Virus record (IMG/VR): IMGVR_UViG_3300023184_000025
Coordinates: 186,001 to 250,000 of that record
Reading direction: 5' to 3' (one strand)
Length of the DNA: 64,000 nt
Below, in pieces: positions 4,641 through 26,060 of this stretch (positions are counted from its first letter, which is position 1; each line of letters begins with the position of its first letter). Made by a program: the position numbers and the translations under genes. Below the pieces are notes generated by a model that worked only from the letters and a program-made list of their open reading frames with translations, had not been told where the DNA came from and made no database searches.

Positions 4641-5303
4641 TTAAGGTGTGTAATTCTCAACAACACCAAGCGGAAGAGTTACGCCAATTGTACCAGACTT
4701 GATCTGACTGCCTTCGTCGGTGAAGAAGTTAACTGCATATCGATTATCACTGTAATCCAATGCAAACTTGTTTGTTAATTTTGCAATGGTTACTGACGTG
4801 CTATCTCCGTATTCTAGAGCAATGCTCATAAAACCAGAGGCTGGAGTTGCATCATCAACCAACACACAAATACCAACAAGGTATACAACACCAGTAGTTC
4901 CTAGGCCGGCGCCACTCACTGTGGCTGTAAAAACATCGCCACTTTGTGCATTTGCTGGACCACCAAGAGCTCGCCAATTGGTGTTACCAGCTGAGTTGAT
5001 GTAGTAAGTGTTACCAGCAACAATATCTTCATCTTGAATTGCTGTAGGAGCAGCCACCATGTACTTTGTGTTGCCCTTTTGACGAATAATAAATGCGCTA
5101 CGATATTGGCTGTCACCAGGGATATAAGCTGTACATTTAACAACAGGGTATGCTGCCGACGATACATCACTTGAACCGCCAACAACACCCAAGAACTGGT
5201 CACTGTTAAAAGTAGATGAGTACACAGGATCAGTCAACGCTGACCACATGTTAAAACCAATATCTTTGGTTGTTGATTTTTTAGTTTTTAGAGGACGACC
5301 CAT
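4641..5303 (-). CDS. Putative virion structural protein (MGRPL-start type)
   Basis: 220-aa ORF, strong AAGGAG RBS, late box at 5400-5405, IIRQKG motif. Confidence 0.6.
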   Translation of the reverse strand: MGRPLKTKKSTTKDIGFNMWSALTDPVYSSTFNSDQFLGVVGGSSDVSSAAYPVVKCTAYIPGDSQYRSAFIIRQKGNTKYMVAAPTAIQDEDIVAGNTYYINSAGNTNWRALGGPANAQSGDVFTATVSGAGLGTTGVVYLVGICVLVDDATPASGFMSIALEYGDSTSVTIAKLTNKFALDYSDNRYAVNFFTDEGSQIKSGTIGVTLPLGVVENYTP

Positions 5304-5399
5304 TTTGTTTTCTCCTTAAAGAAGTCCGATGCGGGTTCTAGCCGCTACGCTGTTGGGTATTAATCATCAGCATAAAACGCAGAATTGCGTTGTGTCTAA
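5304..5399 (-). promoter_or_regulatory. Structured 5' leader downstream of a late TAAATA box
   Basis: Minus-strand stems AACGCA/TGCGTT, TATGCTG/CAGCGTA, GCGG/CCGC and CTTCT/AGGAG (the last covers the RBS). Confidence 0.5.
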
Positions 5400-17752: not shown

Positions 17753-18258
17753 TGGAACTAGAACAAGTCAGACAAGATATAGAACTGTGGATTACAAACT
17801 TCTTAGAAGTTCCACATCCTGCATTAGGGGGATTTTCTCCTTGTCCTTATGCACGGTCAGCACGAGTAAAGAACAGCTATGCAGTTTATCTTGGAGCCGA
17901 TCCTTACTACGATCTTAAAAATTGTGGGCGTCAAGGCATGGGCAACCGAGAAGTTATTATCTATGTGTACGATCCAACAGAATGGTCACACGATATGCTT
18001 GCTGGTAGTATTGAATTGGTTAACAAGGAAGTACTGTTACCTAGAGACATGCTGGCACTAGAAGATCACCCAGATGATGTTGAAATGATCAATGGTGTGT
18101 GCATGAATCAAGGCACGTATGCATTAGCATTGGTACAAAGTCTAAGTGATTTAAACATCAAAGCCAAGCAAATGGCTGACAAAGGATTTTATCACAACTG
18201 GCCCGAAGACTATCTACAAGGCCTGTTTCACCACAGACAAGATCCAAGGAACCCATAA
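17752..18258 (+). CDS. DUF1415-like protein
   Basis: W...GGFSPCPYAR and LEDHPD motifs resemble the DUF1415 CPFA/FHP motifs. Confidence 0.5.
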   Translation: MELEQVRQDIELWITNFLEVPHPALGGFSPCPYARSARVKNSYAVYLGADPYYDLKNCGRQGMGNREVIIYVYDPTEWSHDMLAGSIELVNKEVLLPRDMLALEDHPDDVEMINGVCMNQGTYALALVQSLSDLNIKAKQMADKGFYHNWPEDYLQGLFHHRQDPRNP

Positions 18259-19487
18259 TGTATAGTGTACATCAACCCTGGGATCCGTTGCAAGTTTGTG
18301 TAGTGGGCAAAAGTTATCCTCCTGAGTTTTATAGCTTTATAAAAAATACACGATTACGCAGTTTGTTTGAACGTATTGCTACCGAAACCGAAGAAGACTT
18401 TGTAAATCTTGTGACATTGCTTGAAAAGTTCAATGTAAAGGTTGTAAGACCAAATGTACCCACAGTACAACTAGATCGGTTACTGACACAAAACCGACGG
18501 ATACCCGGTCCTGTTAGTATGATTCCAAGAGATCAAATGATCATGATTGGATCTGACTTTTTTGTGTTTCCATACGACAACATCAGCATAAAATCGTCCG
18601 GTCGAAGTATCATGCCTCCTAGTAATTGGACTAAAAAAAATTACAACAATTTCAAAGGGCCAGATTGGCCACAAGAATTTACTCCATTTGATCAGCTGCC
18701 AGTTTGGATACAAGAAGAATGTAAAAACTTTTTTCAGTTTGAGTTCAAGCCTGGTGACAATTCTGACGAAATTATATCCAAAGCCAGTGAGTTCGACTGG
18801 TGGGAACCAGTTACCAATCTTGTGAAGTCAGCCGGTAATCCAATAATTGAAAATCAATATCATGATATATTAAATCAAATTCCAACTAATGGAATCACCC
18901 GTATTGGAAAAGATTTATTTTTTGGGATATCTGAATCTGCCGATATCGACAAAATCAAAAAACTAACTGAACATTTTTTTCCAGACTTTAGAAATCATAT
19001 TGTGACCACTGGTGGACATATCGACGGTTGTTTTACTCCTGTTAAGCCTGGTCTTATTGTGAGTATAGAAGATATGCCTACCTATGCAGATACATTTCCT
19101 GGATGGGAAGTTGTATACCTAAGCGGAGAAGGCTGGAACAAAGTGAGATCATTTTTGGACCTTAAAGAAAAAAATCAAGGGCGTTGGTGGATCAAGGGTA
19201 GTGAATACGATGACGAACTGATTGAATATGTAGAAACATGGTTACAAGATTGGGTAGGGTATGTTGAGGAAAGTGTGTTTGATGTAAATATCCTTGTGAT
19301 CAATCAACAAAACGTGATTGTCAACAGCTACAATGAAAAAGCATTTGATGCTTTTGAACGTCACAATATAACTCCTCACATTTGCCCTTTAAGACACAGA
19401 TACTTCTGGGACGGTGGTGTACATTGTGTTACCTTGGACCTGGACCGAAAAGGTATCCAGCAAGATTTTTTTCCGGATAGAATATGA
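18258..19487 (+). CDS. Amidinotransferase (glycine/inosamine-phosphate amidinotransferase, pentein fold)
   Basis: WDPLQVCVVG, PRD, GGHIDG (His/Asp), FDVNILVI and GGVHCVTLDL (catalytic Cys). Confidence 0.88.
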   Translation: MYSVHQPWDPLQVCVVGKSYPPEFYSFIKNTRLRSLFERIATETEEDFVNLVTLLEKFNVKVVRPNVPTVQLDRLLTQNRRIPGPVSMIPRDQMIMIGSDFFVFPYDNISIKSSGRSIMPPSNWTKKNYNNFKGPDWPQEFTPFDQLPVWIQEECKNFFQFEFKPGDNSDEIISKASEFDWWEPVTNLVKSAGNPIIENQYHDILNQIPTNGITRIGKDLFFGISESADIDKIKKLTEHFFPDFRNHIVTTGGHIDGCFTPVKPGLIVSIEDMPTYADTFPGWEVVYLSGEGWNKVRSFLDLKEKNQGRWWIKGSEYDDELIEYVETWLQDWVGYVEESVFDVNILVINQQNVIVNSYNEKAFDAFERHNITPHICPLRHRYFWDGGVHCVTLDLDRKGIQQDFFPDRI

Positions 19488-19927
19488 CTTATCAATTTGC
19501 CAGAATTGACCTAGATAAAACCAATTACCTACCCACTGTTGGTTGGAATTACATCACTGATCGTGATGAAACCACACTCAACAAGCTAGATGAAATATAC
19601 AAGTACTACTGTACCTACAAACATTTTTCATCAGTAATGCCTATATTTCACAGTCGCTATCAAGATCCAATGGCTGACATCATTGGCTACTACGACAACG
19701 CTGAACTGGTTGCATTTAGCCTGATACGTAGATTTGATCAGTATAACGCACAATGTGACCAATTTGCTTGGACCTATCATCGACCCAAAATGCGCCTGGG
19801 AATTGAAACAATGAAAACAGAATGTGCTATCTATAAACAGCGTGGTTTTAAATTTTTATACTTAGAGCAAGCACATTTATACAAACAAGATATTGATGGC
19901 TTTGAGATATTAGGTCCGTTGGTGTAA
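19484..19927 (+). CDS. Arginyl/aminoacyl-tRNA-protein transferase-like protein (ATE1/Bpt C-terminal GNAT domain only)
   Basis: EIYKYYCTYKH, GYYDNAELVAFS and RLGIETMKTECAIYKQRGFKFLYL parallel the ATE_C pattern (LY..Y...H; LVAV; SLG...L.EI......Y.YL). Confidence 0.6.
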   Translation: MTYQFARIDLDKTNYLPTVGWNYITDRDETTLNKLDEIYKYYCTYKHFSSVMPIFHSRYQDPMADIIGYYDNAELVAFSLIRRFDQYNAQCDQFAWTYHRPKMRLGIETMKTECAIYKQRGFKFLYLEQAHLYKQDIDGFEILGPLV

Positions 19928-20898
19928 TGTATCAGATTAACAGCGAATGGCATAGACTAAAAACCTGTGTGGTTGGACGTAGTTGGAGTCCTGAGTTTTA
20001 TAGTTGGGTCAAAAACGTTGAGATTCGAAATTATTTTGAAACAATTGCCAGTGAAACCAATCAAGACCTAGATACACTGGCAGTTAATCTGAATGCCTTT
20101 GGAGTACACACGCTTAGGCCAACAGCAGATGTTGTTGATGTTGATGTTAACAATCTACCAAAAGCGCCGTTGGCTCCTAGAGATCATTTGTTGATGCTGG
20201 GGAATAAACTTGTTAAATCATTTTACAATAACACAAATCCAGATTTTTATAAAAACATTTCAGATCATGTGATTGATCAGGGTAATCAAGAAATAGAAGT
20301 TAATCTGCCATCAGTGTGTGGTGCCACTGTTTATCAATTGACCGATCGCGTATTTTTTTCTAATAATAAATCAGCTCATGAGTTTTTACACAATAAAATC
20401 AACAATAAAAAACTAACAGCTTTTCATCAGGAAGGACACATAGATGGATGGTTTTGTCCAGTAACGCCAGGATTGATTATAGCCAATGATGATCCGGTAA
20501 ATCATGAACTGCTAGAATTATTTTTTAAAATGTATTTCAATAACTGGGAAATAGTTTATATCAGACCTAGCTTAGAAAAATTACCATCATTTAAAAATTG
20601 GCAAGCAAGGCATACTGGATCTTGGTGGTTGCCAGGGCAAGAAAGCAATATCAAACTTATTGAGTTTGTTGATTGTTACTTTAAAAATTCGTTGGGTTAT
20701 GTAGCAGAAACTGTGTTTGAATTAAACATGTTGATCATTGACGATAAAAATGCAGTGATCAGTGGCTACAATCAACAAATATTTGATGCACTCAAAAGGC
20801 ATCAAGTTACTCCGCATGTTTCACAATTTAGACACAAGTGTTTTTGGGACAATGGTCTACATTGTGTAACTAGCGATCTTCACAGAGAGAAAATATAA
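19927..20898 (+). CDS. Second amidinotransferase paralogue
   Basis: WHRLKTCVVG, PRD, EGHIDG, FELNMLII and NGLHCVTSDL. Confidence 0.87.
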   Translation: MYQINSEWHRLKTCVVGRSWSPEFYSWVKNVEIRNYFETIASETNQDLDTLAVNLNAFGVHTLRPTADVVDVDVNNLPKAPLAPRDHLLMLGNKLVKSFYNNTNPDFYKNISDHVIDQGNQEIEVNLPSVCGATVYQLTDRVFFSNNKSAHEFLHNKINNKKLTAFHQEGHIDGWFCPVTPGLIIANDDPVNHELLELFFKMYFNNWEIVYIRPSLEKLPSFKNWQARHTGSWWLPGQESNIKLIEFVDCYFKNSLGYVAETVFELNMLIIDDKNAVISGYNQQIFDALKRHQVTPHVSQFRHKCFWDNGLHCVTSDLHREKI

Positions 20899-20899
20899 A

Positions 20900-21235
20900 A
20901 TGGATTTGTATACAATTTGGGCAGATAAAGAAGGCGACATCTCAGACCTAGACTGGGTCAACGGAATGAAGAGTTTTTTTGATCATTTGATTACAGAAGG
21001 TAAAATGGAGAGCTATAGAATTACTCGTTGTAAAATGGGATTCCGTAGTATTGCCGATATGCCAGAATGGATGATACTTATGGAGTTCCGAGACATGGGA
21101 CAAATGGACAATGCTTTCAAACGAGTAGCACCACTCAAAGGAGAACTCGAAGAGAAACATAGAAGTTTTAATCAGTTTGTTAGTGGCACTATTCAACACG
21201 CATTGTTTAGAGATTGGCCAGATACTAACTTATAA
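20900..21235 (+). CDS. DUF6614-like dimeric alpha/beta barrel protein
   Basis: YTIWAD...HLITEGKMESYRITRCKMG...EWMILMEFRDMGQMDNAF pattern. Confidence 0.55.
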   Translation: MDLYTIWADKEGDISDLDWVNGMKSFFDHLITEGKMESYRITRCKMGFRSIADMPEWMILMEFRDMGQMDNAFKRVAPLKGELEEKHRSFNQFVSGTIQHALFRDWPDTNL

Positions 21236-21245
21236 CGGCTTTATG

Positions 21246-21318
21246 AGAACTTCGTTGAAGTTCTATTGATTTCGCTATCGCTCATCAATATTATTATAAA
21301 CATCGAACGAAGTGAGAT
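21246..21318. other. Cluster of three hairpins (terminator- or ssDNA-signal-like)
   Basis: AGAACTTC/GAAGTTCT (21246-21264), TATTGAT/ATCAATA (21264-21290), ATC-GA-AC-GAA-GT-GA-GAT (21302-21318). Confidence 0.5.
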
Positions 21319-21324
21319 TACAGT

Positions 21325-21687
21325 TATTATCCAGATTCTTTGGTCACACTTTGCCCGCACAGGGCAAAGATTGAAAGCATTATCCGAGTTCGAATAGCCA
21401 CATAGCGTTACAACATTACAGAGGCGGTTGTCCGGTACCTCGAGTTGTGTCTTTATACAACGGCAATTAATATAATATACGCTAACATACTATATTAACC
21501 TGCTACATCACTGTAGCGTCTTTTTAGCCTTTAAATTCTTTTCAAACAATCAAACCGCGGCAATTAGCGATCGTCGTCCTGTCAAGGATAGTGATTGAGT
21601 GCTTGCTAGAGCGGCAAGACTTCCGTCCCTGCGATCCGAGATCCAGGTCTAGGGCACATGAAATTGACCTGTGCAAGTCGTAACTAC
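21325..21687 (-). ncRNA. Putative large structured non-coding RNA, family unassigned (3' boundary uncertain)
   Basis: No ORF of 60 aa or more in 21236-21687; about ten stems; G-U pairs and a GUGA tetraloop favour the minus strand; possible pseudoknot and long-range closing helix. Confidence 0.65.
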
Positions 21688-22116
21688 TTAAATTTTGTTT
21701 AAAATATGGGAGCCGTGTACTCTAACTTGTATGTGGCCATTGTAATAATCTTTTGATTCTAATACTCGTCTACTGAATTGTTCTCTTGCCTCAATGTAAC
21801 TACATTCCGATTTGGAGTTGCAATAATAAAGTATTTCTCTGGTGAAGTTTTCGGTGCCTAGTTTGATTACGTCTGCGGTTAATTCTGGGCTTGACCCGTA
21901 GTACTCTCTCCAATCTGAGTCGACCTTTGATCGTATCTTCTTCCGCTTTTTAATGCCGTTTTTTTGTGTTACTGTTTTGTATGTGGTTTTTGAAAATTTT
22001 GCGAGTTTTTTGCCTATGTACTTGCGACCAGTGAGATTACATGTGATCAAGTAAACAAATCCAACACACTCTTCGGGCAATGTCTCAACTGGGGTGTCTT
22101 GAAATAGCCATGTCAT
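21688..22116 (-). CDS. Stand-alone GIY-YIG (Seg-like) nuclease domain protein
   Basis: GFVYLIT...RKYIGKK motif, DWREYYGSS, FTREIL, YIEAREQ (Glu) and YYNG (Asn); basic KNGIKKRKKIRSK insert; no C-terminal DNA-binding domain. Confidence 0.75.
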   Translation of the reverse strand: MTWLFQDTPVETLPEECVGFVYLITCNLTGRKYIGKKLAKFSKTTYKTVTQKNGIKKRKKIRSKVDSDWREYYGSSPELTADVIKLGTENFTREILYYCNSKSECSYIEAREQFSRRVLESKDYYNGHIQVRVHGSHILNKI

Positions 22117-22178
22117 ATGTTGTATGTGATTTATCCTTGCTGTATAGTTATCATCTCCGTTGATCTTAGTGTAAAAAT

Positions 22179-23756
22179 TTAGTGGAAATCTAATAAGGTT
22201 TCTAAGTTTTCAAAATCCTGAGTATTGATGACATTCTTGTCAAGGTTTTGTAAAATATTATATAAAATTTGTAACTCTTCTCTGTTACGAGTCTGTGGCC
22301 ATCCTAGTTTTACACTTACTTCGTGTAATTCTAATCGACGACGTATGCGTTCTTTTAGTGTTAGTGTTGGGTTCAATTCATTTACCCATCCAAATCCTAG
22401 TGCAATGTCACGAAGACCCTGTGGTAGATTGTGAAACCGTTTGGCAAAGTCTGGATCAGTGATTAGTTTTACTTTTGAATCACCGGCTAGCTTGCCTTCT
22501 TCTCGGAACATACCGGTGTACCCCCAACGTACCATGTGAATCACTCCTGCTCGAGCATATTTTTGATACCGGTGTAAAAACTCAATGTTGTAGTTGTGAT
22601 CTTCCAATGTCTCAACAGGATACCCAACAAACATTAAACAAACATTTTTAATTCCATAGTATGCAGACTGTGCAAAATGGAAATCAATATCTGCATTGCT
22701 ATGATTTTTACCCATGTGTTTTCTAACATGTGGACTGTAAGATTCAAATCCAGTGACCAGCATATTACAACCGGCCTTGGCCATTAACTCCCAGTCTTTT
22801 TCAGTTTGATCAAATCTTGTTCTACAAATAAACTGTCCAAGATATTTTATTGGTTCTAAACTTGCATCTTGTTTTTTAGCCTCTACCAATTGACGATTTA
22901 CTTCTCTCCACATTTTCATATTACCGTTGATTAGACTGTCGGTAAAGTGAAAGAGATTAACATTATATTTTTTCTTTCCGTTGATAATTTCTTTTACAAT
23001 ATCATCGGCACTACGAGAAGTATATGTTGGCCACATGTCAGAAATACTACAAAATTTACAATTCCTAACACACCCTCTTGATGCAGTGATATAAATTCCT
23101 GGCTCAGATGTGTAATAGTAATTTGATGGGTCAATGCCTTCATATTCAGGATGCGGCAGCTTGTCTAATTTACGAATTTGAACTGCTGGGTTTCCGTTAA
23201 CTCCGTTAGAATTATCGTTACCATTTAATAATTCAATGATGGCCTGTTCACCTTCTCCTTGGATATAGTAATCAACCAATCCGGTCTTTAGTGCATAGTC
23301 AGCAAACGTTGTAGAATCCAATGCCAGCGGGTTCTCGGTTAAATTTGGCAAACTTCCTGGCCAAGCATAGCTACCTGCTCCGCCTATGACAATTTTACAG
23401 TTTAATTGATCTCGTACCTTCTGCAACATCACACTGGCAGGAATAACACTAAATCTAGTAAACACAGAAATCCCAACCATGTCAGGATTAAACTTGTCTA
23501 CAGTTGTTAAAAATTGATCAATTGTATCATTTAATATTTGTTGAGTTGCAGGTTCTAGTGTATATTTTTTGCAACGCCAGTATTGTTCAAGTTCAACCCA
23601 CACATCTGTGCTTACATTGCTGTGTAAAAACAAATTAAAATCATACACGTTACATTCCCAACCAGCACTACGTACACAAGCACTTATGGCCGCGGCGGCG
23701 GCTGGTGGTCTTTCTAACTCTTGACTTGGTACGTTGATGAATGCAAATCGTTTCAT
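22179..23756 (-). CDS. B12-binding radical SAM protein (class B methyltransferase-like)
   Basis: N-terminal cobalamin-binding Rossmann domain (KIVIGG, GEGEQAI); SRGCVRNCKFC CxxxCxxC; GFES; FVGYPVET. Confidence 0.88.
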   Translation of the reverse strand: MKRFAFINVPSQELERPPAAAAAISACVRSAGWECNVYDFNLFLHSNVSTDVWVELEQYWRCKKYTLEPATQQILNDTIDQFLTTVDKFNPDMVGISVFTRFSVIPASVMLQKVRDQLNCKIVIGGAGSYAWPGSLPNLTENPLALDSTTFADYALKTGLVDYYIQGEGEQAIIELLNGNDNSNGVNGNPAVQIRKLDKLPHPEYEGIDPSNYYYTSEPGIYITASRGCVRNCKFCSISDMWPTYTSRSADDIVKEIINGKKKYNVNLFHFTDSLINGNMKMWREVNRQLVEAKKQDASLEPIKYLGQFICRTRFDQTEKDWELMAKAGCNMLVTGFESYSPHVRKHMGKNHSNADIDFHFAQSAYYGIKNVCLMFVGYPVETLEDHNYNIEFLHRYQKYARAGVIHMVRWGYTGMFREEGKLAGDSKVKLITDPDFAKRFHNLPQGLRDIALGFGWVNELNPTLTLKERIRRRLELHEVSVKLGWPQTRNREELQILYNILQNLDKNVINTQDFENLETLLDFH

Positions 23757-24296: not shown

Positions 24297-26060
24297 TTAT
24301 TCTAGCTCTGTGTCATTGTTGTAGGATGTAAATCCGTTTTCTTTTACAACACGTAAAATATTCTCTACACGACCAGCAAGCTCATCTCTGTGACTTACTA
24401 ACCAAATACTTTTATGACGTTCTCTACTCATCTTTTTAAGTAGTGCAAGACTGTTTTCAACACCCTGGGTATCCATACCTGAATCAACAAGTTCGTCAAT
24501 GAATAATACATTGATTGGATGATATAAACTTTCCCAAACGTCTCGGAATGCCCACGACATGGACAATATAAGTCGATTGCGCTCACCACGCGACAAATTA
24601 TCAAAGTCTAGATCACGACCCAGTTCGGTAATCTCAACACTGAGATCATTTTGAAATACAACCTGATGCGGCAATCCAATTTTATCTAGATAGTGTGTGA
24701 GTCGAGCATTTAAATAACTTAAATTTTGCTCAATAATCTTTTTACGAATAAAACTATCTTTTGAAGTCAACAACTTCAACAAGAAGTCTTGATGTTCTTG
24801 CATTCTAGTTAGATCATTTAATCCAACATAGTCAACAACCTGCAATGCTTGTTCTTGCATGTCGGTAATTTGTTCAGCATACGGATCTTGTTCTTGTTGC
24901 TTGCTATCAATCTGTGTTTGTAGGTTGGCCAATGTAGCACGATGATGAATAGCATCTTCTTCGTTGTCATAGAACATGGTCGGAGGTTTGCCAACTGCGC
25001 CAATGTCATTTAACTCGTTTTGAATTTCACTAACTTCGGTAGTTTGCTCGGTGCATCGTGTTCTTGCATCAGCTAAGTCAGTGCGTTTATTAGTCAACAC
25101 TTGCTCGTGTTTCTCATCATGAAATGCCTGTCCGCAGGTGTGACAGGTATGTGCTTCTAATGATACAATCTCATCAGACAATTTTTTAATTGTTTTTTCT
25201 TCGCGTTGAACTTCTAGTTTTGCTCGACTTAACTTAGACTGTAAGTCGTTGAATGTTTTTCTTCTGTTATCCCAGGCAGTATGTTCACGATGTGCAGTAA
25301 TTTCTGCATCGATGTCAATCTCTTGTAGTGCTTCCAATGCCGTTTGTAGTTTAGTAAGTTCTTCAGCTCGCTTGGTAATCCACAATGTTTGTCTACGCTT
25401 CAAACTGTCAATTTGTTCTTCAATCCTTTTGTTTGCTTCTTGAACTGCACGTATTCTAAACTCTTCCTGACTGATAGAGTCCTTGGTTTCTCTGTTTAAT
25501 TCTTTAATGCGTTCAGCCTTTTCACTCAGCAACGTTATTCCCAACAACTGTTCAATCAAGGTTCGCTGATCGTTGGCTTTGAGACTTAAAAAAGGTTCAG
25601 TATAAGTGTTAAGTGCTAGAATATGTCTAAACATATCGTGACTCATACCAAGTATGTGTTCAATGGCATCCTGTGTTTCTCTGCTGTCTCCTTGACTGTC
25701 GTCGGTGATTTCTTGTTCTTGGCTGTTTACATAAAACTTCAATACGTTGGGTTTTCGTCCGCGCTCAATTCGATAATCTTTACCACTCACTTCAAAATCT
25801 AAACTAACCAACATATTTTTGCCATTGGTCTTGTTTACAAGATTGTCTTTGCGAATATTAGTTAATGCTTGCCCATATAGAGAATAGCTGAGAGCATTGA
25901 TAATAGTAGTTTTGCCTGTGCCATTACGACTGCCGTCACCACCTAGATCAAGATTCTCACCTAGCACAAGTGTAAGATCTTTACGATCAAAATCAACATC
26001 CTGAGTAGAATTACCCACGCTCATAAAGTTTTTAACAGTCAAAGTTTTAATATTAATCAC
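24297..26060 (-). CDS. gp46: Recombination ATPase gp46 (Rad50/SbcC-like)
   Basis: Walker A NGTGKTT, zinc hook CHTC, signature LSRGE, Walker B FIDE, H-loop VSH. Confidence 0.95.
   Translation of the reverse strand: MINIKTLTVKNFMSVGNSTQDVDFDRKDLTLVLGENLDLGGDGSRNGTGKTTIINALSYSLYGQALTNIRKDNLVNKTNGKNMLVSLDFEVSGKDYRIERGRKPNVLKFYVNSQEQEITDDSQGDSRETQDAIEHILGMSHDMFRHILALNTYTEPFLSLKANDQRTLIEQLLGITLLSEKAERIKELNRETKDSISQEEFRIRAVQEANKRIEEQIDSLKRRQTLWITKRAEELTKLQTALEALQEIDIDAEITAHREHTAWDNRRKTFNDLQSKLSRAKLEVQREEKTIKKLSDEIVSLEAHTCHTCGQAFHDEKHEQVLTNKRTDLADARTRCTEQTTEVSEIQNELNDIGAVGKPPTMFYDNEEDAIHHRATLANLQTQIDSKQQEQDPYAEQITDMQEQALQVVDYVGLNDLTRMQEHQDFLLKLLTSKDSFIRKKIIEQNLSYLNARLTHYLDKIGLPHQVVFQNDLSVEITELGRDLDFDNLSRGERNRLILSMSWAFRDVWESLYHPINVLFIDELVDSGMDTQGVENSLALLKKMSRERHKSIWLVSHRDELAGRVENILRVVKENGFTSYNNDTELE

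What the first reader, a model, noticed from the sequence alone, without database searches (positions are those of the whole stretch)
21325..22116. Ornate non-coding RNA starting at the stop codon of a minimal GIY-YIG nuclease: candidate RNA-associated or RNA-guided nuclease system
Seen: in a genome where most gaps are under 100 nt, 21236-21687 is ORF-free and packed with helices that begin a few nt after the TAA of the minus-strand GIY-YIG gene. Minus-strand stems (+ coordinates): GCACA/TGTGC (21654-21674), whose loop GGTC can pair with GACC (21646-21649) as a pseudoknot; CCTG-GATC-TCG-GATC-G-CAGG; CTTGC/GCAAG (21602-21618); CAATCA/TGATTG (21547-21597) enclosing two hairpins; GCTACA-GUGA-TGTAGC (21502-21517, GNRA loop); a 14-bp stem with three G-U pairs (21467-21498); GAGG..CGG-ACAA-CCG-CCTC (21421-21441); CTTTGCCC/GGGCAAAG (21349-21369); and a possible long-range GTTACGAC/GTTGTAAC helix (21677-21684 with 21407-21414). 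Most wobble pairs and the GNRA loop work only on the minus strand, the same strand as the nuclease. The 142-aa protein is a bare catalytic domain with a very basic insert. Known: homing GIY-YIGs such as I-TevI need appended DNA-binding domains, and TnpB/IscB get specificity from an adjacent ncRNA. Inference: protein and RNA may form an RNP. The RNA could instead be an independent large phage RNA of the ROOL/GOLLD kind.
Basis: partly seen in the sequence, partly recalled or inferred. Interest (0 to 1): 0.88.

Follow-up and report, generated by a model that had tools for sequence, protein, structure and literature searches.

The report
Large folded RNA beside phage nuclease
The gap holds a real, roughly 445-base, heavily folded non-coding RNA whose first third is an already catalogued motif (Polynucleobacter-1); it sits beside a small nuclease gene in a clade of giant freshwater phages but also occurs without that gene in bacteria, and it carries two short segments that are always identical to each other, with no partner found.

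Summary
The structured RNA is real and lies on the minus strand, about window 21244-21690. Its 5' 136 nt (21544-21679) are Rfam RF01718, Polynucleobacter-1 (120 bits against a cut-off of 37). Weinberg et al. (2010) already noted that this motif lies downstream of one gene family.

What I could not find described:
- The Rfam motif is only the 5' domain of a ~445-nt RNA with several pseudoknots.
- A ~220-nt 3' core is conserved in about 150 contigs of ~350-kb T4-like freshwater phages. It also occurs behind a different 5' domain, and in tRNA-integrated islands of bacterial chromosomes.
- Two 7-nt segments about 53 nt apart are identical to each other in 133 of 137 distinct homologues. They differ between homologues (14 variants), and I found no complementary partner.

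The RNA-guided-nuclease reading is not supported. Five RNA-bearing bacterial genomes have no SegE-type GIY-YIG gene. Eight isolated phages with GIY-YIG homologues lack the RNA. In about a dozen phage contigs, cargo genes separate the two.

The nuclease most resembles a domesticated Seg-type endonuclease parked beside a conserved RNA gene, as T4 SegB is beside tRNA genes. The RNA's function is unknown. My best guess is a trans-acting RNA that uses the twin segments as matched recognition elements.

The parts
21688..22116 (-). SegE-type GIY-YIG gene, 142 aa, catalytic domain only
   Evidence: Pfam PF19835 at 114 bits, residues 3-129. It is the only copy in the 345-kb genome. There are 77 distinct homologues of 141-148 aa, and the GxxY, YxGKK, W, R and E positions are invariant or nearly so.
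21244..21690 (-). Whole conserved non-coding RNA, about 445 nt
   Evidence: nhmmer conservation runs through the entire gap in about 90 loci. Supported by alignment A1, mutual information and pair counts.
21544..21679 (-). 5' domain = Rfam RF01718 Polynucleobacter-1 (helices P1, P2, P3, P4 with P4a/P4b)
   Evidence: cmscan gives 120.3 bits against a gathering score of 37, covering model positions 1-141.
21684..21688 (-). 5' leader strand of pseudoknot PK1, abutting or overlapping the upstream stop codon. It pairs with the P3 loop at 21607-21611.
   Evidence: Pairing is 93-96% in the core, with 2-4 pair types at two positions. This lies outside the Rfam model.
21519..21543 (-). A-rich linker between the two domains
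   Evidence: Alignment A1; no covarying pairs found.
21466..21499 (-). P6 long hairpin. Its loop 21479-21485 pairs with 21402-21408 (pseudoknot PK2).
   Evidence: P6 is 76-97% paired with up to 5 pair types. PK2 has 7 pairs at 94-100% pairing, and 5 of them covary.
21457..21461 (-). 5' strand of pseudoknot PK3, pairing with the P8 loop 21427-21431
   Evidence: Pairing is 91-100%, with compensatory changes at three pairs.
21410..21448 (-). P7 (21444-21448 with 21410-21414) enclosing hairpin P8 (21437-21441 with 21421-21425). Contains the near-invariant GGUAC..ACCGCC motif.
   Evidence: One P7 pair shows 5 pair types. P8 is 92-100% paired. Invariant columns are listed.
21379..21385 (-). Twin segment 1 (GGAUAAU here), preceded by the conserved AACUC
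   Evidence: Identical to twin segment 2 in 133 of 137 distinct homologues, with 14 variants.
21349..21369 (-). P9 hairpin between the twin segments, followed by the conserved UGUGAC (21343-21348)
   Evidence: Alignments A1 and A2. The stem sequence differs between type A and type B but stays a hairpin.
21326..21332 (-). Twin segment 2 (GGAUAAU here), preceded by the conserved AAUCU
   Evidence: Spacing to segment 1 is 47-65 nt, median 53.
21266..21288 (-). P11 hairpin with the conserved internal loop YGAG-CGN-NAG-CGAAR
   Evidence: Pairs 21285/21269 and 21284/21270 are 95-97% paired with 3-4 pair types.
21246..21264 (-). P12 terminal hairpin, taken as the 3' end of the RNA. In this window it also reads as a terminator for the convergent plus-strand gene ending at 21235.
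   Evidence: Six pairs are 90-96% paired with 2-5 pair types. Flagged terminator-like on the plus strand. In 27 of 73 other loci it is followed by TATAAATA and a same-strand gene.

Best explanation
**What it is (shown).** The gap encodes one ~445-nt non-coding RNA on the minus strand with several pseudoknots. Its 5' domain is the known Polynucleobacter-1 motif. Its ~220-nt 3' core (PK3, P8, P7, twin segment 1, P9, twin segment 2, P11, P12) is the more widely conserved part.

**How it is made (inferred).** In the phage it always begins within 26 nt of an upstream same-strand stop codon, with no promoter-like site in between. I therefore think it is made as the 3' extension of the upstream mRNA and ends at the P12 hairpin.

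**Relation to the nuclease (inferred from distribution).** The RNA is an autonomous element of mobile DNA: giant T4-like freshwater phages and tRNA-integrated bacterial islands. It does not need the GIY-YIG protein. The nuclease is a fixed, domesticated Seg-type endonuclease beside a conserved RNA gene in a hyper-variable cargo region, as T4/T6 SegB sits among tRNA genes.

**How it acts (weakest step).** The folded scaffold displays two unpaired, sequence-matched 7-nt segments, each with conserved flanks. They act as twin recognition elements for one trans partner: a nucleic acid with two equivalent sites, or a symmetric complex.
For: **Identity and structure**
- Rfam hit.
- The whole gap is conserved.
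- About 80 covariation-supported pairs, including three or four pseudoknots, with G-U far outnumbering A-C.

**Clade**
- 37 of 50 pattern-fetched virus records carry a full-length copy. CheckV completeness of these contigs implies genomes of about 350 kb.
- There is one copy per genome.

**Independence from the nuclease**
- 4 of 151 genomes in one bacterial family carry the RNA (RF01718 at 46-71 bits, plus the 3' core). They sit in chromosomal islands with tRNA, a P4-type integrase, MazEF, Doc and a TIR effector.
- SegE_GIY-YIG is absent from all five RNA-bearing bacterial genomes.
- Eight isolated phages have GIY-YIG homologues of at most 50% identity but no RNA.
- Cargo ORFs of 230-340 aa are inserted between the nuclease and the RNA in about 12 loci.
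- About 40 of 64 loci in the gp46-based sample keep only the 3' core, behind an unrelated 5' domain.

**Twin segments**
- 133 of 137 identical, 14 variants.
- The rule also holds in the bacterial copies.
- It holds in the Polynucleobacter chromosome copy in the 2010 raw alignment, where both are AGCGAAA.

**Seg precedent**
- SegB recognises DNA of the tRNA T-psi-C motif (PMC2330249). It is statistically co-located with tRNA genes and is described as repeatedly domesticated by myoviruses (PMC13096335).
Against: - No transcript ends or strand are shown. The metatranscriptome contigs cover both the nuclease gene and the RNA, carry no direction, and could include DNA carry-over.
- No target of the twin segments was found.
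- Co-inheritance of nuclease and RNA across the whole phage clade, down to 38% protein identity, is stronger than I would expect for mere neighbours.
- The bacterial genomes are incomplete MAGs.
- The core model R1 is almost a pure sequence profile (6 base pairs), so distant copies in other phages could have been missed.
- The 142-aa protein has no DNA-binding domain, which a classical Seg endonuclease has.
Confidence: 0.55

Rival explanations
1. RNA-guided or RNA-dependent nuclease. The bare GIY-YIG domain binds the adjacent RNA and takes its substrate specificity from it, with the matched 7-mers as guide-like elements.
For: - The RNA starts 0-56 nt after the nuclease stop in 83 of 90 loci.
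- Both are present in every well-covered locus of a gp46-based sample, including nuclease lineages at 38-42% identity.
- The protein has no DNA-binding domain.
- The twin segments are variable elements inside a conserved scaffold.
Against: - The RNA with intact twin segments occurs in five bacterial genomes that have no SegE-type GIY-YIG.
- Homologous 140-aa nucleases in 756 phage records include eight checked genomes without the RNA.
- Cargo genes separate the two in about 12 loci.
- The part next to the nuclease, the 5' domain, is the swappable part.
- Seven nucleotides and 14 variants are far short of known guides.
- No complement to the 7-mer was found in the nuclease mRNA (0 of 67), the flanks or the own genome.
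Confidence: 0.1
2. Homing or hot-spot reading. The nuclease is a Seg-type endonuclease that recognises DNA by protein alone. It targets or protects the DNA of the conserved RNA gene, and so promotes inheritance, recombination or amplification of the RNA and the neighbouring cargo genes. This is compatible with the best explanation for the RNA itself.
For: - SegB recognises the DNA of a conserved RNA motif and drives preferred inheritance and amplification of adjacent RNA genes (PMC2330249, PMC13096335).
- The region is hyper-variable on both sides of the nuclease: 0-4.8 kb of differing genes between gp46 and the nuclease, insertions between nuclease and RNA, and differing genes after the RNA.
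Against: - The gene is fixed rather than sporadic: present in 78 of 80 gp46-sampled loci, and the two exceptions have under 650 nt of downstream sequence.
- It has no DNA-binding domain.
- No empty allele was found to serve as a homing target.
Confidence: 0.2
3. A purely cis-acting 3' UTR that stabilises, terminates or translationally couples the upstream mRNA, with no function of its own.
For: - It always abuts an upstream stop codon.
- PK1 overlaps the stop region, so a terminating ribosome would melt it.
- It ends in a terminator-like hairpin.
Against: - About 445 nt with several pseudoknots, and more conserved than the flanking proteins, is far beyond what a stabiliser needs.
- In bacteria it stands alone, with the neighbouring gene divergent.
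- The upstream gene can be any of several unrelated cargo genes.
Confidence: 0.1
4. The twin segments work at the DNA level, as matched cores for a site-specific recombinase or as iterons for a DNA-binding protein. The identity requirement would then have nothing to do with RNA.
For: Recombination cores must match each other while being free to vary (established knowledge of tyrosine recombinases). The observed pattern is exactly that, in direct orientation and with conserved left flanks.
Against: - About 53 bp is very short for synapsis.
- No inverted-repeat arms surround the cores.
- The intervening and flanking sequence shows RNA-type covariation with G-U pairs.
- No recombinase is linked in the phage loci.
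Confidence: 0.05

Closest known systems
Polynucleobacter-1 RNA motif (Rfam RF01718; Weinberg et al. 2010, PMC2864571)
   Same: Window 21544-21679 is a full-length, high-scoring member. The 2010 supplement already says that most copies lie downstream of one gene family (GOS11034), possibly related to a P-SSM2 cyanophage gene.
   Different: - The family as defined covers only the 5' 136 nt.
- The 3' core, the extra pseudoknots, the twin segments, and the assignment to ~350-kb phage genomes and bacterial islands are not part of the description.
- The authors found no copy in any purified phage.
T4/T6 SegB, a free-standing GIY-YIG endonuclease in the tRNA gene cluster (PMC2330249, PMC13096335)
   Same: A Seg-family GIY-YIG gene lies directly beside structured-RNA genes in a T4-like myovirus, within a variable region that also holds anti-defence-type genes. 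The family is reported as repeatedly domesticated.
   Different: - SegB is longer and has a DNA-binding part. It is sporadic among relatives and its neighbours are tRNAs.
- Here the protein is a 142-aa domain, is fixed in the clade, and its neighbour is one large RNA.
IscB/HEARO and TnpB omega-RNA systems
   Same: A small nuclease gene has a large structured RNA immediately adjacent. HEARO came from the same 2010 survey.
   Different: Those RNAs are obligately linked to their nuclease and carry a guide of about 16-20 nt matching the flanking target. Here the linkage breaks in bacteria, and the only variable elements are two matched 7-mers with no target found.
GOLLD and ROOL large non-coding RNAs of phages and prophages
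   Same: A large, intricately folded RNA of unknown function, carried by phages and mobile DNA.
   Different: There is no Rfam match to either. This RNA is smaller and has a different architecture.
T4 gene 60 translational bypass element with mobA (bioRxiv 10.1101/2022.08.31.505936)
   Same: Two identical short segments lie about 50 nt apart. In most variants each reads as a sense codon followed by UAA or UGA, with a hairpin after the first, and the element sits next to a homing-endonuclease-type gene in a T4-like phage.
   Different: There is no conserved reading frame, start codon or ribosome-binding site leading into segment 1 (judged by eye on alignment A1). The identity spans 7 nt or more, not one codon.

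Membership tests
Polynucleobacter-1 RNA (RF01718) | Score at or above the curated gathering threshold of the covariance model, over its full length | tested here: met
   120.3 bits against 37, model positions 1-141 of 141. Related virus records score 89-121 bits.
Polynucleobacter-1 RNA (RF01718) | Location downstream of a GOS11034-family gene, as described in 2010 | not testable with these tools
The upstream gene is a SegE-type GIY-YIG in about 150 phage loci, which is probably that family.
GIY-YIG nuclease superfamily (Pfam SegE_GIY-YIG, PF19835) | Profile match above the cut-off, with the motif residues conserved | tested here: met
   114.4 bits against 25. The GxxY, YxGKK, R and E positions are invariant or at least 90% conserved in 77 homologues. 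Which residues are catalytic is taken from my own knowledge of I-TevI.
Free-standing Seg-type homing endonuclease | Catalytic domain joined to a C-terminal DNA-binding domain | tested here: not met
   The protein is 142 aa and the Pfam domain covers residues 3-129. Homologues are 141-148 aa.
Free-standing Seg-type homing endonuclease | Sporadic presence among close relatives, with empty target alleles | tested here: not met
   Present in 78 of 80 gp46-sampled loci. The two exceptions have under 650 nt of downstream sequence.
RNA-guided nuclease systems (IscB or TnpB kind) | Obligate co-occurrence of the nuclease and its RNA | tested here: not met
   The RNA occurs without the nuclease in five bacterial genomes. 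Nuclease homologues occur without the RNA in eight phages.
RNA-guided nuclease systems (IscB or TnpB kind) | A variable guide next to a conserved scaffold, complementary to a target | tested here: inconclusive
   Two matched 7-mers vary (14 variants) within a conserved scaffold. No complementary site was found in cis, in the flanks or in the own genome.
GOLLD / ROOL | Match to the Rfam models | tested here: not met
   No match up to E = 5 in 21100-22250.
tmRNA | tRNA-like domain plus a tag reading frame, detected by ARAGORN or Rfam | tested here: not met
   No tmRNA in the window. The genome has its own permuted tmRNA elsewhere, at genome position 287900-288233.
Translational bypass element (T4 gene 60 kind) | Matched take-off and landing codons inside an open reading frame | tested here: not met
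   Matched segments about 50 nt apart are present. The distance from the nearest conserved GUG or AUG to segment 1 changes frame between homologues, and no ORF of 45 aa or more covers the region.

The most novel reading that the evidence does not exclude
The ~220-nt 3' core is a scaffold of a new kind, carried by mobile DNA. It presents two identical, freely re-programmable short segments (7 nt or more, plus conserved flanks). These recognise, by base pairing, a two-fold or repeated nucleic-acid target not yet identified. Both copies must be changed together to switch specificity. That would explain why very close relatives differ at three of seven positions in both copies at once.
Probability: 0.25. 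Interest if true: 0.85.

Novelty: new variant of a known kind. Interest (0 to 1): 0.55.

Why it matters
**What changes for a known family**
- Polynucleobacter-1 has been an orphan motif since 2010, known from a handful of sequences and never placed in a sequenced phage.
- Here it turns out to be the optional 5' domain of a much larger RNA with several pseudoknots.
- That RNA is a hallmark of an abundant clade of ~350-kb freshwater phages and also rides on bacterial genomic islands.
- This gives the family a defined gene, boundaries, a deep alignment and carrier genomes in which to test it.

**The twin segments**
- The two segments must stay identical to each other but are free to change. This is an unusual evolutionary signature.
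- Known causes of such a signature are a shared pairing partner, re-pairing of one tRNA at two sites, or matched recombination cores. Each would be an interesting mechanism in a phage RNA.

**Caution for gene-neighbourhood reasoning**
- The nuclease-plus-RNA adjacency here looks like the SegB-tRNA pattern rather than a guide-RNA system.

Tried and rejected
1. **Cis partner for the twin segments.** Mutual information over all columns of A1 found none.
2. **Complement within 3 kb either side.** Exact and G-U-tolerant searches gave only two recurrent matches. One is a degenerate match about 200 nt before the gp46 stop, which I attribute by inspection to conserved coding sequence. The other is the invariant UUGUUU at the end of the 5' domain. 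That could pair by wobble but cannot explain the identity rule.
3. **Complement in the own genome.** Counts look unremarkable for a 7-mer in 345 kb (my estimate), and no phage tRNA carries an exact complement.
4. **Pairing with the start region of the downstream gene.** Own 7-mers pair no better than other loci's 7-mers.
5. **Pairing with the nuclease mRNA.** 0 of 67 loci.
6. **A helix joining the sequences before the two segments.** No better than shuffled controls, so I dropped it.
7. **Translational bypass or a mini-ORF.** No conserved frame leads into segment 1.
8. **tmRNA-like RNA.** No model match, and the genome has its own tmRNA.
9. **CsrA-type GGA sites.** About half of the variants lack GGA.
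10. **Weak Melnitz hit of model R1.** It lies antisense inside a coding gene, so it is spurious.
11. **Inserted ORFs between nuclease and RNA as further homing endonucleases.** They are 230-340 aa cargo proteins.
12. **Homology of the bacterial neighbour proteins to the phage downstream proteins.** Only the first ~15 residues look alike; tblastn and phmmer find nothing.
13. **RNAalifold.** On the full alignment it recovers only 67 pairs and misses the pseudoknots. On the core alignment it gave 6 pairs.
14. **Step omitted.** I did not run the count of structure pairs with a hand-written 755-column structure string. I counted pairs in a script instead.
Full report
**What is at the coordinates.** The window is part of a 345,154-bp virus record that CheckV rates 99% complete. 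On the minus strand a Rad50-like gp46 gene (24297-26060) is followed by a 179-aa ORF, a radical-SAM/B12-binding protein (22179-23756) and a 142-aa ORF (21688-22116). Pfam assigns that last ORF to SegE_GIY-YIG at 114 bits, covering residues 3-129. PHROGs files it under a family mislabelled 'NAD synthetase'. A DUF6614 gene converges from the plus strand and ends at 21235. The gap between them contains no ORF above 44 aa.

**A known family, but only for the 5' third.** cmscan places Rfam RF01718 (Polynucleobacter-1) at 21544-21679 on the minus strand. The score is 120.3 bits against a gathering score of 37, over the full model. Nothing else in Rfam matches the gap up to E = 5, and there is no tRNA or tmRNA in the window. 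The only paper in the library that names the motif is Weinberg et al. 2010. Its supplement says three things: most copies lie downstream of genes of family GOS11034, with possible homology to a P-SSM2 cyanophage gene; the 3' half is not always detected; and no copy was found in a purified phage. So the RNA-gene adjacency is not a new observation.

**Relatives.** A conserved-core DNA pattern fetched 119 viral contigs.
- 37 of the first 50 records carry a full-length RF01718 copy at 89-121 bits, one per record. CheckV completeness of these contigs implies genomes of about 350 kb.
- nhmmer and tblastn found the RNA in 92 loci and a GIY-YIG homologue (57-100% identity) in 91.
- The RNA starts 0-56 nt after the nuclease stop in 83 of 90 loci. 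In six loci, 0.7-1.0 kb is inserted between them.
- The conserved order is gp46, then a variable stretch, then the nuclease, then the RNA. Downstream genes vary.

**The RNA is much longer than the Rfam motif.** The 308 nt between the motif and the convergent gene are conserved in essentially every locus, with nhmmer E-values from 1e-9 to 1e-45. Three analyses of a 75-sequence alignment (A1) support a ~445-nt RNA: mutual information, RNAalifold (67 pairs, 44 with compensatory changes) and scripted pair counts.
- The Rfam helices P1-P4 are confirmed.
- A new pseudoknot joins the 5' leader to the P3 loop. The leader strand abuts the upstream stop codon.
- P5 and the long P6 hairpin follow. The P6 loop pairs with 21402-21408.
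- 21457-21461 pairs with the loop of P8.
- P7 encloses P8.
- P9, P11 and the terminal P12 hairpin complete the fold.
- G-U cells outnumber A-C cells 510 to 156, which fixes the strand as minus.
- Single-sequence folding is uninformative on strand: z = -2.9 against -2.7.

**An RNA-independent sample.** Eighty contigs were fetched by gp46 alone, at 61-100% identity.
- 78 have a GIY-YIG homologue (38-100% identity). The other two have under 650 nt of sequence after gp46.
- 56 of the 59 loci with at least 2.5 kb after gp46 have the RNA. In two of the three exceptions the contig ends right after the nuclease gene.
- Only 24 of the 64 RNA hits match the whole profile.
- About 40 match only the 3' half. 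These have about 140-370 nt (mostly 180-230) of unrelated but mutually conserved sequence between the nuclease and the core, which I call type B. Nine type-B loci gave no Rfam hit.
- So the 3' core is the constant part, and the Polynucleobacter-1 domain is one of at least two alternative 5' domains.

**Copies without the nuclease.** A 3'-core pattern scan of GTDB genomes returned mostly chance matches, but ten were real.
- Six look like phage contigs binned into freshwater MAGs, with the nuclease upstream; a seventh (L244) is a 1.7-kb fragment with no upstream sequence.
- Three, in Methylococcaceae-type MAGs, have the RNA and no nuclease.
- A profile of the core (R1) found it in 4 of 151 genomes of that family and in 1 of 151 Polynucleobacter genomes searched. 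That one is the MAG with the phage-like contig.
- The bacterial copies reach the Rfam threshold (46-71 bits). They lie in chromosomal islands next to a tRNA, a P4-type integrase, MazEF, Doc/Fic, a TIR effector and a type ISP restriction enzyme, beside housekeeping genes such as ftsH, glmM-like and carB.
- SegE_GIY-YIG is absent from all five of these genomes. The same search does find the gene in the window's own genome.

**Nuclease homologues without the RNA.** The nuclease has homologues of at most 50% identity in 756 isolated phage records. Four checked genomes (Melnitz, C48C1, V45v66, ACP17) lack RF01718, and these plus four more (P-SSM2, S-SRM01, BUCT-ZZ01, S-SSM7) lack the core. One weak Melnitz hit is antisense inside a coding gene.

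**The twin segments.**
- Two 7-mers, at 21379-21385 and 21326-21332 (both GGAUAAU here), follow the conserved AACUC and AAUCU respectively.
- They covary by identity, not by complementarity. Mutual information is 0.6-0.87 bits and the columns are 97-99% the same.
- Across 137 distinct cores they are identical in 133, with 14 different 7-mers. Spacing is 47-65 nt, median 53. Two independent draws from the observed pool would match only 17% of the time.
- The rule holds in type B and in the bacterial copies. It also holds in the Polynucleobacter chromosome copy printed in the 2010 raw alignment, where both segments are AGCGAAA.
- Close relatives can differ at three positions in both copies at once. 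The window has GGAUAAU; L092, whose nuclease is 91% identical, has AGAUGAA.
- I found no complementary partner. I checked the RNA itself, 3 kb of flank either side, the own genome, the phage tRNAs, the nuclease mRNA and the start of the downstream gene.

**Boundaries and neighbours.**
- No sigma-70-like site separates the nuclease gene from the RNA.
- Where cargo genes are inserted, the RNA still begins within 26 nt of the inserted gene's stop codon.
- In 27 of 73 distinct loci the P12 hairpin is followed by TATAAATA, against 0.6% of random windows. From my own knowledge this is the T4 late-promoter consensus.
- In 55 of 73 loci a same-strand gene follows. In 32 of those the product begins M-[KRN]-[IVT]-x-[EQD]-[ILVF]-[ILVA]. 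From memory, this resembles the capsid-targeting sequence of T4 internal proteins.
- The bacterial neighbours begin similarly (MRISELLNDDQLYEI), but no wider homology is detectable.

**Expression.** Freshwater, estuary and marine RNA-seq assemblies contain contigs of relatives over both the nuclease gene and the RNA. These contigs have no strand, and DNA carry-over cannot be excluded. This is inconclusive.

**Interpretation.**
- The RNA is a member of a known family whose true extent, clade and architecture were not described.
- The closest documented analogue of the adjacency is SegB. It is a Seg-family GIY-YIG endonuclease among tRNA genes that recognises the DNA of a conserved RNA motif. 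It drives inheritance and amplification of the neighbouring genes, and is reported as repeatedly domesticated in myoviruses.
- The most interesting open point is the identity rule between the twin segments.

Noticed in passing
window 5301-5392 (-): A second Rfam family, freshwater-2 (RF02980), scores 66 bits against 49.9. The match ends in AAGGAG...AUG, so it lies in the 5' leader of a minus-strand gene.
   Followed up: no
genome C1:287900-308000 (outside the window): The phage carries 28 tRNA genes in a cluster and a permuted tmRNA with the tag ANDEQFALAA.
   Followed up: no
window 22179-23756 (-): A 525-aa radical-SAM protein with a B12-binding domain lies between gp46 and the nuclease. Clear homologues in that position are only in the window's near relatives (L007 100%, L024 66%; L092 has only a 29% match), while elsewhere other cargo fills the slot.
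   Followed up: partly
window 18258-19487 (+) and 19927-20898 (+): Two neighbouring ORFs (409 and 323 aa) are clear paralogues. They share an N-terminus (..VCVVGKSYPPEFYSF.. and ..TCVVGRSWSPEFYSW..) and a C-terminus (..FWDGGVHCVTLDL.. and ..FWDNGLHCVTSDL..). Neither has a Pfam family; the 323-aa one matches phrog_25854 of unknown function.
   Followed up: no
L017, L039, L059, L061, L067, L128, L140, L144, L148, L175, L182: Unrelated same-strand cargo ORFs of 230-340 aa are inserted exactly between the nuclease stop and the RNA start. By eye, some carry a GCSxxxG motif typical of SGNH hydrolases.
   Followed up: partly
L338 (G051:C36) 1-2911 and L339 (G051:C30): A bacterial island reads tRNA, P4-type integrase, 77-aa protein, MazF, MazE, then the RNA. 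The matching contig end carries a TIR (CAP12/Pycsar-type) effector and a protein starting MRISELLNDDQLYEI.
   Followed up: partly
L345 2485-2937 (Melnitz phage MZ577098.1 45984-46436): The closest isolated phage by nuclease similarity has an annotated 453-nt tmRNA gene. This shows that large structured RNAs are common cargo in this phage group.
   Followed up: no
L336 12-85: A group II intron domain match (RF00029, 50.5 bits) lies on the same small bacterial contig as an RNA copy.
   Followed up: no
L130 (gp46-sampled contig): This is the only locus with about 1.8 kb of sequence after the nuclease gene and no RNA hit. It holds either a larger insertion or a divergent RNA.
   Followed up: no
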